Assembly: GCF_000315625.1 (NCBI RefSeq)
Contig: NW_005434666.1
Location: forward strand, 854,748-918,747
Direction of reading: 5' to 3'
Length of the DNA: 64,000 bases
DNA from: Guillardia theta CCMP2712
Taxonomy: Eukaryota; Protista; Cryptophyta
Both the position numbers and the translations under genes were made by a program. Positions within the stretch are counted from its first letter, which is position 1. Every line of letters starts with the position of its first letter. This document shows, in pieces, positions 11,313 to 15,301 of this stretch. The notes beneath the pieces were generated by a model. The model was not told the origin of the DNA. It made no database searches and worked only from the letters and a program-made list of their open reading frames with translations.

Positions 11313-11617
11313 ATCTAGCGGCTCTCTTGACATGCTTGTAGTACCAAGCACTTATGGAAAGAGGAGTTAGCTTGGATTGTAAATGAAATCTTTCAATCGA
11401 TCCATTCCATGTTGTCGATTCAATGATCGCTCCCCAGATGTTGATATGCTCCAGAACTCTATAGTTCCCTTGGAATAATTGATTGGCATGATCTCCAGCT
11501 CAACATTATGCCAACAGCCTCCGTCTAATATTGAATTACGCTAATCAATCTTCATTCACAATCTACACTCATATTTCACACTAATCTGTTAATGGGACAC
11601 TGCGGATTCCTCCTTGT

Positions 11618-13352
11618 TCAATCTTTGGGCAGGTCAGCATCGTCGATCTCCTGACCTGCCAACAGAGCTGCTCGCTGAGCCTCAAGCGCTTCGAGCTCCA
11701 TGGCAACTTCAGGAAGCATCGAAGGCTGCGACCTCAACTTTGCCAAACGACGCTGCGAGATCAGAATCAGCACACGACAAGCATTTCAAAGTGTAAGCAC
11801 CTGAATAGGCTTCAGGCGCTGGAAAGGCCACTGACGAATGCCCATTTTGCGGCAAACCTGCACACCAGTGAGGCTCGGTTACCATTACAAGTACATGCGC
11901 TCGTTCACCTTCTTGATCGCAGTGGCACAGATCCCGAGTTTGCGAGCAGCATCGTTGAGAGGCATATCAAAGTGCTGCCTCAGCAGCTCTGTGCTCAACT
12001 TGACTGGGACGATGGTTGTGTCCATGTCGTGCAGGGGGCGCCCTCCGAGGGCTTGCTTCCCTCCTTGACCCCAACTTCTCCTCCTCAATCTCGGCTTCAC
12101 CTCCAAGATTTCTACCTTAGAGTTCTTCTTGAGGAGTGAATCCGCAAACGTGGAATCCTCGCCGTCGCCACCGAACACCTTAGATGAAGATGCCATGACG
12201 ATGTCTGCTGCTGTCTGGTTTCCAACGAGGGACGAGAAATTCAACGAGGGCAGGGACGAGTTCCTGTCAGGGGACGACCGAGAGGCATCAGCGTTTCTGT
12301 TTGCAGTCAGCTGGAAAGAAACATGGTTGGTTGACGCGCTGTGAGCCTTGCCGCCCATGAAAGCAGAATCCTTGAAGGACGGCAACATCTGTGACTCAGC
12401 AGAACGTCTGAGCGCTGGATCACTGAGCGGCTGGAAGTGAAGCTTGCTGCTGATCAGATTGTCTGCCTCCTGCATGCCCCGATTCCACAGGCTGAGAGAT
12501 GTTCCATCGTTAAGTTCAGGTTGCCCGGGACCAAGCGGAGTCATAACTTGTGGGGAAGACAGGTCGTCGGAGGAGACTGAACCAGCAGGGGACGCAGTCC
12601 TCCAGCTCTTCGAGTACTGAGTCAGACTGAGAGGTTTCGGTCGGTTTGTGAATCGTTCCAGCAGAGACTCTGTCGAGTTGAGAAGATTTGGAAAGCGAGA
12701 CGATGAGAAAAAGGCAAAATCCTCCATAGCCTTGATCACTTTAGGCTGCACACAGAAACAAAGTGAGACCGGGCGGAATCAAGTACCATCAGGACACCTG
12801 AAGCGGATCCATGGAGTGCTTGTCATGCTTCTTGGTTATCTTCACAACAGCCAACGCATTCACAATCGCATATCTCCTAAGATTCTGGACTTTAACAGCA
12901 AAGGCAGCAATGTCGTTGAGTAACGTCCTCAGGCACTCTGGATCAGCTCTGAAGCTTTCTTCTCCGAAATTCTTGTGCTGAACACTCTCTCAGACCCATT
13001 CTTGGAAATGTCATCACGTGCTCACCTCAAGGATCCTCACTCGCTCCCCGAGCTTGTTAGTCATGTAGTCACAATATTCGCTCTCCTTGTTCACAAAGAA
13101 ATCGTTGACCTGCAATGTAGCGATCAGAATAGCATCCCCGGGTAAGGATGAGCATACCTGGTTGATTTCATGGAGAAGAGCTCGAACGAAAGTTTGCTCA
13201 TGCGCTTCTTGGGAAGCAGAGTCGGTTTGTGCCGTCAGCGGCTTGATGAGCTTCTTGAGGCACTTGTAATTCACAAATCTATCCGCCAGTTCCAGCCGAT
13301 TGCCGAGCAAGCAGGCCGCTTCCTCGGCCCTCATTCGCTGTCCAAACTTCAT
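11618..13352 (-). CDS. SPX domain-RWP-RK domain fusion protein (putative transcription factor), 495 aa, 6 exons
   Basis: Exons 13352-13158, 13109-13026, 12977-12798, 12745-11909, 11857-11801, 11752-11618. All five introns are GT-AG, phase 0, 48-52 nt. SPX motifs MKFG, VNYKCLKKLIK, LLHEINQVNDFF, NALAVVKITKKHDK. RWP-RK motif LRQHFDMPLNDAARKLGICATAIKKVCRKMGIRQWPFQRL. Confidence 0.92.
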
Positions 13353-13609
13353 GGCACTTTCCTCTATTTTTTCTTCTCAATCCCTCAAACAGTCCTGCCT
13401 TACTACTTGTGTCCCCCTCACGTCAAAGGTCTTTAGCGTTCTTGGCCTTCTAGTCCGTCTTTCTACCTGCCTGTCCTTTCGTCTCTTAGTCCTTCTGGAT
13501 GCCTTAAGGGGCCCTGGCTTGCTGCTGCTCCCTCCCCTCGTCCTCTCCCTCGCTACACTCGTGTCGCATAGCTCCTGCCACTTGCATGTTGGACCACCAA
13601 ATCCTTCGG

Positions 13610-14679: not shown

Positions 14680-15301
14680 TCGCCGGGGCGGGCCCGGCTA
14701 TGGGATCCCTCGGACTCTGCCAGCCGCGCGGCCGGCTGGGCGCGGCCCGGGCCTGACTCTGTGAGGCCGCGACTTTCTGAGTCTCACTGCCAAGATCGGA
14801 CGGACGGCGCCGCCGCGTCACCGTGGCACAGTCGGCCCAGTCCGATCGGAGTGGCACTGGGGCCCCGGCGGCGGGCGGCCCGGCGGCTGCCCCGGCGCCG
14901 GGGCCGGCAGTTGGCGCCGTCCGAGTCCGGGTCGCCGCCCGGCCAGCTGACGGCCTCCGAGTGCCAGAGCGTCGGACGGGGGCCGGGGGCCCGGGGCCCG
15001 GGGCCCGGGCGGCCGGGCGGGGCCCGGGCCGTCGAGCCGCGAGTCGTTGATCCGACACTGATCGGAAGTAGTATTACGGTAGTAATGTGGTGACGCCGGC
15101 CCCGCTGGCCCCGCTCCGGGACCGTCCGACCGTACCGAGGCGGGCCGGCCGCTCGCCGTGCCGGCCCGGGGGCTACCGTAGTACACTGTGACGGCCCGGG
15201 CGCCGGTGGTCCGTCACCAAGCTGTGGAACTGTGATGCGAGTACTACTTTAGCTTAACTTTGAGTAAAGGTCTCAGTCGGGACTCCGGGAAAGCAACTGC
15301 C
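14680..15301. promoter_or_regulatory. Very GC-rich island (GGCCCGG words, TACGGTAGTA/TACCGTAGTA motifs) ending in TTAACTTTGAGTAAA and GGACTCCGGGAAAGCAACTGCC
   Basis: Lies between divergent genes and shares motifs with 7673-7890, 34150-34385 and 56095-56470. Confidence 0.5.

What the first reader, a model, noticed from the sequence alone, without database searches (positions are those of the whole stretch)
11618..13352. SPX-RWP-RK fusion: a candidate one-component phosphate-sensing transcription factor
Seen: six exons joined by clean phase-0 GT-AG introns give one 495-aa protein. It has an N-terminal SPX domain with the ligand-binding surface intact (MKFG; Y-K-x-L-K-K; K-x-x-K-K-x-D-K), a Ser-rich linker and a C-terminal RWP-RK domain (variant QWPFQR) plus a short coiled coil. 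The ORF track shows the two halves as separate ORFs. Established: SPX domains sense inositol pyrophosphates as a phosphate signal and are usually fused to EXS, MFS, RING, VTC, ANK or GDPD domains, or act alone on PHR factors. RWP-RK is the DNA-binding domain of NLP/NIT2 nitrate regulators and RKD/MID. In rice, separate SPX4 and NLP3 proteins interact to couple N and P signalling. Inference: this gene fuses that link into one chain, so InsP7/8 binding may directly gate DNA binding or nuclear entry. I do not recall this architecture being described but cannot search.
Basis: partly seen in the sequence, partly recalled or inferred. Interest (0 to 1): 0.88.

Follow-up and report, generated by a model that had tools for sequence, protein, structure and literature searches.

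The report
Cryptophyte SPX–RWP-RK transcription factor
This is a real, expressed gene of the cryptophyte alga Guillardia theta whose protein joins an intact phosphate-status sensor (SPX) to an RWP-RK DNA-binding domain; related cryptophytes keep the combination, no paper found here describes it, and its function is untested.

Summary
Observation confirmed. Six exons on the minus strand give a 495-aa protein identical to the public G. theta model GUITHDRAFT_150618 (XP_005839647.1). Single contigs from two probable RNA runs carry all five splice junctions, including 12797-12746. That junction lies inside the SPX fold, whose last helices are in exon 4. All six inositol-pyrophosphate-binding residues are intact, and the predicted SPX fold matches solved SPX domains. 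SPX plus RWP-RK without RING is conserved in Hanusia, Geminigera and metagenomes. Two SPX-RING-RWP-RK paralogues exist, which this scan had already found elsewhere in the genome. An SPX-less sister gene has an 83% identical DNA-binding module, and one metagenomic contig holds an apparently independent SPX-RWP-RK-BRK fusion. The genome encodes PPIP5K, and no PHR/PSR1 coiled-coil domain was found. Best reading (about 0.5): a one-component transcription factor gated by inositol pyrophosphates, working like SPX-PHR in one chain. Predicted EIN3-SPX fusions in Selaginella are a published precedent for SPX joined to a DNA-binding domain.

The parts
11536..13577 (-). Transcribed unit: about 225-nt 5' leader, six exons, about 80-nt 3' UTR, poly(A) at about 11536
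   Evidence: Contigs in X1 and X7 reach 13575 and 13577 (contig ends, not a mapped start); poly(A) loose ends in 58 reads of X22
13158..13352 (-). Exon 1, residues 1-65: MKFG start, N-terminal helical hairpin with a 7-residue insertion typical of the RING-less clade, ligand residues Y29/K30/K33/K34 (13268-13251)
13026..13109 (-). Exon 2, residues 66-93, long SPX helix
12798..12977 (-). Exon 3, residues 94-153, SPX helix with lysine cluster K139/K142/K143/K146 (12842-12819)
12746..12797 (-). Intron 3 (52 nt, GT-AG), the junction between the two ORF-track halves; spliced in the main contigs; one MMETSP isoform appears to retain it
12644..12745 (-). Start of exon 4, residues 154-187: last helices of the SPX domain
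   Evidence: alignment to rice SPX1 7e40 through query residue 184; helices 153-160, 164-167, 171-186 in the model
12110..12643 (-). Ser/Thr-rich disordered linker, residues 188-365 (43 S+T of 178)
   Evidence: pLDDT under 50 over 188-361; 75% identity to Hanusia against 91% for SPX and 98% for the C-terminal module; composition
12035..12103 (-). Conserved basic motif, residues 368-390 (K-P-R-L-R-R-R ... G-G-R-P): candidate nuclear localisation signal or DNA-contact extension (inferred)
   Evidence: near-invariant in the family alignment
11810..11998 (-). RWP-RK domain, residues 403-448, split by intron 4; QWPFQR variant of the signature
   Evidence: PF02042 E 1.5e-8 on exon 4, E 3e-18 on the Hanusia orthologue
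11660..11824 (-). Two C-terminal helices (residues about 444-459 and 465-482), a coiled-coil-like hairpin split by intron 5
   Evidence: model helices 443-458 and 464-481 of the orthologue, pLDDT about 90

Best explanation
A one-component, inositol-pyrophosphate-gated transcription factor of cryptophytes. SHOWN: one mRNA and one protein; an SPX fold with a complete ligand surface; a disordered linker; a basic motif, an RWP-RK domain and a helical hairpin; the architecture kept across cryptophyte genera; PPIP5K and IPK-family kinases encoded in the genome. INFERRED: when phosphate is ample, InsP7/InsP8 binds the SPX surface and docks SPX onto the basic RWP-RK/hairpin module of its own chain or of a dimer partner, blocking dimerisation or DNA binding, as InsP-bound SPX1 does to PHR2 in trans. 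When phosphate falls, the ligand drops and the factor binds target promoters, probably phosphate-starvation genes, filling the PHR/PSR1 role. The direction of the switch and the targets are borrowed from plants. The SPX-less sister gene on contig C47 may bind the same sites without phosphate control.
For: Splicing in single contigs. Y29, K33, K143 and K139, K142, K146 have the spacing of the Vtc3/Vtc4 phosphate-binding and lysine clusters given in PMC9911596, and are kept in the full-length SPX+RWP-RK proteins and most loci examined. SPX model pLDDT 90, best match rice SPX1 7e40, TM 0.75. Orthologues in Hanusia phi, Geminigera cryophila and metagenomic contigs. PPIP5K present (E 7e-22 to solved structures); IPK matches. 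No PF14379 MYB coiled-coil match in the genome, and no LHEQLE-like motif in the ten best Myb loci. Plant mechanism in PMC13153306. An apparently independent SPX-RWP-RK fusion, P0204.
Against: No binding, DNA-binding, localisation or starvation-expression data. The full-length model gives no confident relative placement of the domains (pTM 0.41). An intact surface does not prove sensing: the Vtc3 clusters are intact yet dispensable (PMC9911596). The basic helices proposed as docking site are identical in the SPX-less sister, so they show no SPX-specific constraint. SPX has been lost or degraded several times in this RWP-RK clade. The absence of PSR1 rests on a six-frame search of an intron-rich genome.
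Confidence: 0.5

Rival explanations
1. SPX binds the ligand but acts through other proteins: it recruits or releases a partner (a RING-bearing paralogue, the SPX-only protein on contig C61, or an anchor), controlling turnover or nuclear entry of the factor rather than DNA binding in cis.
For: Two SPX-RING-RWP-RK paralogues with a related module (67/128 identical) and SPX-only and SPX-RING genes in the same genome; a long disordered linker; rice SPX4 is degraded to let PHR2 and NLP3 enter the nucleus (PMC8717665).
Against: No interaction data; a covalent link kept across genera is more simply explained by action in cis.
Confidence: 0.22
2. A nitrogen/phosphorus integrator: an NIT2/NLP-like regulator of nitrate assimilation genes placed under phosphate control.
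For: RWP-RK factors regulate nitrate genes in plants and Chlamydomonas (established knowledge); SPX4-NLP3 coupling exists in rice.
Against: No GAF or PB1 domain. At least 150 RWP-RK matches in this genome, so the domain does not imply nitrogen. The closest relatives identified are all cryptophyte or unassigned metagenomic proteins, not NLPs.
Confidence: 0.13
3. The SPX domain is a ligand-independent structural or dimerisation module, or is becoming dispensable; the protein is an ordinary cryptophyte RWP-RK factor.
For: Repeated SPX loss and a degenerate SPX (P0114, lysines replaced) in the same clade; two metagenomic orthologues changed lysines next to the conserved Y/K pair.
Against: The six defining residues and MKF are kept in G. 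theta, H. phi and G. cryophila although the SPX domains are only about 34% identical.
Confidence: 0.1
4. Intron retention yields separate SPX-only and RWP-RK-only products that act in trans, and these are the functional forms.
For: MMETSP proteins consistent with retention of intron 2 (96 aa), intron 3 (155 aa plus a 336-aa downstream ORF) or intron 4 (439 aa).
Against: The main contigs are fully spliced in three runs; the 155-aa product lacks the last SPX helices; such forms are common in de novo assemblies.
Confidence: 0.05

Closest known systems
Plant SPX-only sensor with PHR1/PHR2 MYB-CC factor (AtSPX1-PHR1, OsSPX1-PHR2, PDB 7e40)
   Same: SPX fold and ligand residues; a sensor coupled to a DNA-binding domain with adjacent coiled-coil-like helices; best sequence and fold match
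   Different: One chain instead of two; RWP-RK instead of GARP MYB; gating not shown
NLP/NIT2 and RKD/MID RWP-RK factors; rice SPX4-NLP3
   Same: RWP-RK DNA-binding domain
   Different: No GAF, no PB1; QWPFQR variant; a cryptophyte-specific basic motif upstream; SPX is covalently attached
SPX-RING (NLA) and the cryptophyte SPX-RING-RWP-RK paralogues (contigs C6 and C169; Hanusia A0A7S0DW38)
   Same: SPX and RWP-RK modules related, with the first intron position shared with the C169 gene
   Different: This gene has no RING and no long C-terminal extension; its RWP-RK module falls on the other side of a 99/97 branch
Predicted EIN3-SPX fusions of Selaginella moellendorffii (PMC8717665)
   Same: SPX fused to a transcription-factor DNA-binding domain, proposed as phosphate control in one chain
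   Different: SPX is C-terminal, a different DNA-binding domain, one species, untested

Membership tests
SPX domain (PF03105) | Profile match above the curated cut-off | tested here: met
   41.3 bits against cut-off 27.8 on the full-length Hanusia orthologue, 91% identical in SPX; single exons 20-24 bits
SPX domain (PF03105) | N-terminal helical hairpin plus three-helix bundle | tested here: met
   Model pLDDT 90; top Foldseek hits are SPX domains
SPX domain (PF03105) | Phosphate-binding cluster (Y, K, K) and lysine surface cluster (K, K, K) | tested here: met
   Y29, K33, K143; K139, K142, K146
SPX domain (PF03105) | Binds InsP6/InsP7/InsP8 | not testable with these tools
   needs ITC or NMR
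RWP-RK family (PF02042) | Profile match above cut-off | tested here: met
   34.8 bits on exon 4, 65.8 on the orthologue; cut-off 29.3
RWP-RK family (PF02042) | Canonical RWPxRK hexapeptide | tested here: inconclusive
   WP kept; reads QWPFQR; RING paralogues read QWPHRK
RWP-RK family (PF02042) | Sequence-specific DNA binding | not testable with these tools
   needs EMSA or DAP-seq
NLP / NIT2 | GAF nitrate-sensing region and PB1 domain | tested here: not met
   Only SPX and RWP-RK in the Pfam scan
SPX-RING (NLA) | C3HC4 RING after SPX | tested here: not met
   Absent here, present in paralogues P0031 and P0045
PHR/PSR1 | GARP MYB plus LHEQLE coiled coil | tested here: not met
   Absent from the protein; no PF14379 match in the genome

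The most novel reading that the evidence does not exclude
Cryptophytes lack the SPX-PHR/PSR1 pair and run their phosphate-starvation response through a small family of one-component SPX-(RING)-RWP-RK factors in which inositol pyrophosphate directly switches DNA binding. An SPX-less twin binds the same sites without phosphate control, and the same fusion arose a second time in another lineage.
Probability: 0.3. Interest if true: 0.85.

Novelty: new variant of a known kind. Interest (0 to 1): 0.62.

Why it matters
No SPX protein with its own DNA-binding domain is described as tested in the papers found here. If gating is real, this would be a transcription factor directly controlled by an inositol pyrophosphate, a candidate phosphate-starvation regulator for an abundant algal group, and a natural template for a single-chain InsP8 biosensor. 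The RING-less member is the simplest one to test, and the SPX-less sister with an 83% identical module is a ready control.

Tried and rejected
Separate transcripts for the two halves: rejected by single contigs across all joints and because the junction lies inside the SPX fold. Gene-model artefact: rejected by an identical public model and by orthologues in other genera. NLP/NIT2 membership: rejected (no GAF, no PB1). Paper searches: SPX with RWP-RK gave 29 papers, 27 listed, which by title and abstract are plant or green-algal nitrogen/phosphorus studies and none on a fusion (not read in full). Searches with Guillardia, cryptophyte, protist, microalga and oomycete terms showed none either. 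The ESM Atlas gave no usable feature hit and only single-domain structural hits. No solved RWP-RK structure was found by sequence. A metagenome scan for relatives of P0204 found none. The full-length model did not place the domains. The SPX tree could not settle whether RING was lost or gained (72/89). No expression data under phosphate or nitrogen starvation were reachable. As the operators asked, the spliced model was searched exon by exon by reference and the joined step was left out; whole-length searches and folds used the public Hanusia orthologue P0015 by id. The public G. theta record P0009 was used only in local scripts.

Full report
Gene structure. The gene lies on the minus strand. 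The exons are 13352-13158, 13109-13026, 12977-12798, 12745-11909, 11857-11801 and 11752-11618, separated by five GT-AG, phase-0 introns of 48-52 nt. They give 495 codons and one stop. The ORF track shows the parts as separate ORFs. The translation is identical to the public protein P0009, Guillardia theta GUITHDRAFT_150618 / XP_005839647.1 / L1JWB9, listed as hypothetical or 'RWP-RK domain-containing'. So the gene is in databases but uncharacterised.

One transcript. In runs X1 and X7, from separate studies and guessed to be RNA, a single contig of 1799 and 1783 nt covers the locus from about 13575 to about 11540 and skips all five introns. X11 shows the same five joints. Raw RNA reads of X22, strongly biased to the 3' end, confirm the last two joints and a poly(A) at about 11536. 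It also lies inside the SPX domain: residues 154-187 in exon 4 align with the last helices of rice SPX1 and fold with the rest. MMETSP holds proteins consistent with retention of intron 2, 3 or 4. These look minor, but contigs drop rare forms, so their share is not measured.

Domains. By exon, SPX scores E 7e-4 and 5e-5 and RWP-RK E 1.5e-8. The Hanusia orthologue P0015, 91% identical in SPX and 98% in the C-terminal module, passes both Pfam cut-offs and has no other domain. Its SPX model has pLDDT 90 and matches solved SPX domains, best rice SPX1 in 7e40. Y29, K33, K143 and K139, K142, K146 have the spacing of the phosphate-binding and lysine clusters given for Vtc3 and Vtc4 in PMC9911596. The linker, residues 188-365, is disordered and Ser/Thr-rich. 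A basic motif at 368-390 is nearly invariant in the family. Two helices follow the RWP-RK core. The full-length model does not fix the domains relative to each other (pTM 0.41).

Family. RING-less SPX+RWP-RK proteins occur in Hanusia phi, Geminigera cryophila and metagenomic contigs; in the contigs the missing N-terminal exons are present upstream. G. theta has two further SPX+RWP-RK genes that also carry a RING, on contigs C6 and C169. The C6 gene is seen as one contig in the same runs. This scan had already reported both (s1-436904, s1-439484). In the RWP-RK module tree the RING-bearing and RING-less members are split by a 99/97 branch. The window gene is sister (99/97) to an SPX-less gene on C47, GUITHDRAFT_110717, with 106 of 128 module residues identical; no SPX trace was found in 6 kb around that gene. 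SPX-bearing rows lie at several places in the RING-less clade, which suggests SPX was ancestral there and lost more than once, although those forks are weak and some SPX-less rows are fragments. The SPX tree groups the RING-less members with the SPX-only C61 type only weakly (72/89). Both share a 7-residue N-terminal insertion. The first intron position is shared with the C169 RING gene. Whether RING was lost or gained is not settled. One further protein, P0204, from a single intronless metagenomic contig of unknown origin, has SPX, RWP-RK and a weak BRK match. It lacks the family's basic motif and shares only 35 of 128 module residues, so it looks like an independent fusion; no relatives were found.

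Context. The genome encodes a PPIP5K and IPK-family kinases, so the ligand can probably be made. No PHR/PSR1 coiled-coil domain was found, and the ten best Myb loci show no such motif; introns limit this search. RWP-RK has at least 150 matches in the genome, the scoring limit. It is a general-purpose DNA-binding domain here and does not imply nitrate signalling.

Mechanism. In rice, InsP6 stabilises helix 1 of SPX1, which blocks PHR2 dimerisation and contacts its MYB domain (PMC13153306). The most economical reading is the same switch in one chain: ligand-bound SPX docks on the basic RWP-RK/hairpin module and shuts it off when phosphate is ample (0.5). Rivals are control through partners, turnover or localisation (0.22), a nitrogen/phosphorus integrator (0.13), a ligand-independent SPX (0.1) and action in trans from retained-intron products (0.05). 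The transcript, domains, residues and conservation are shown; ligand binding, gating, direction and targets are inferred.

Novelty. Reviews list SPX-only, EXS, MFS, RING, SLC and VTC classes, plus rarer predicted fusions including EIN3-SPX in Selaginella (PMC13153306, PMC8717665). The latter already proposes phosphate control of a fused transcription-factor domain. SPX with RWP-RK appears in neither, nor in any title or abstract my searches returned; the library misses most subscription journals. I rate it a new variant of a known kind, real and directly testable, at interest 0.62.

Method note. The spliced model was searched exon by exon by reference and the joined step was left out. Whole-length searches used the public orthologue P0015 by id.

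Noticed in passing
G000:C47, L039:1076-2695 (-): SPX-less sister gene GUITHDRAFT_110717 with an RWP-RK module 83% identical to this gene's and apparently the same intron position in the RWP-RK core; a Hanusia orthologue exists. Possible phosphate-insensitive twin.
   Followed up: partly
L040:432-1871 (ENA ERZ1764455): Intronless SPX + RWP-RK + weak BRK protein P0204 from an unknown eukaryote; apparently an independent fusion; single contig.
   Followed up: partly
L022:140-1798; protein P0235: P0114 has a degenerate SPX (lysines replaced) before RWP-RK. P0235 has almost the same N-terminal part followed by a Homeobox_KN match: a possible second SPX-to-DNA-binding-domain join, or a misassembly.
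   Followed up: no
L006:1306-2892 (G000:C8, about 20 kb before the window): Single long ORF for SPX-RING followed by hydrophobic, probably membrane-spanning segments.
   Followed up: no
L013 (G000:C61) and L014 (G000:C102): C61: SPX-only gene sharing the N-terminal insertion of the window gene. C102: degenerate SPX with the lysine cluster lost.
   Followed up: partly
window 8698-about 11400 (+): Convergent neighbour with armadillo/HEAT-like repeats (weak ARMC5 match); expressed, with RNA depth up to about 11400-11480, close to this gene's poly(A) site.
   Followed up: no
window 14680-15210: Very GC-rich patch with short GGCCCGG-type direct and inverted repeats upstream of the gene; no function assigned.
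   Followed up: partly
window 11589-11600: Hundreds of X22 reads have loose ends or strand switches here, resembling nearby opposite-strand sequence; probably a library artefact.
   Followed up: no
L023:1747-2184 (G000:C10): PPIP5K/VIP1 kinase gene, E 7e-22 to solved structures.
   Followed up: yes
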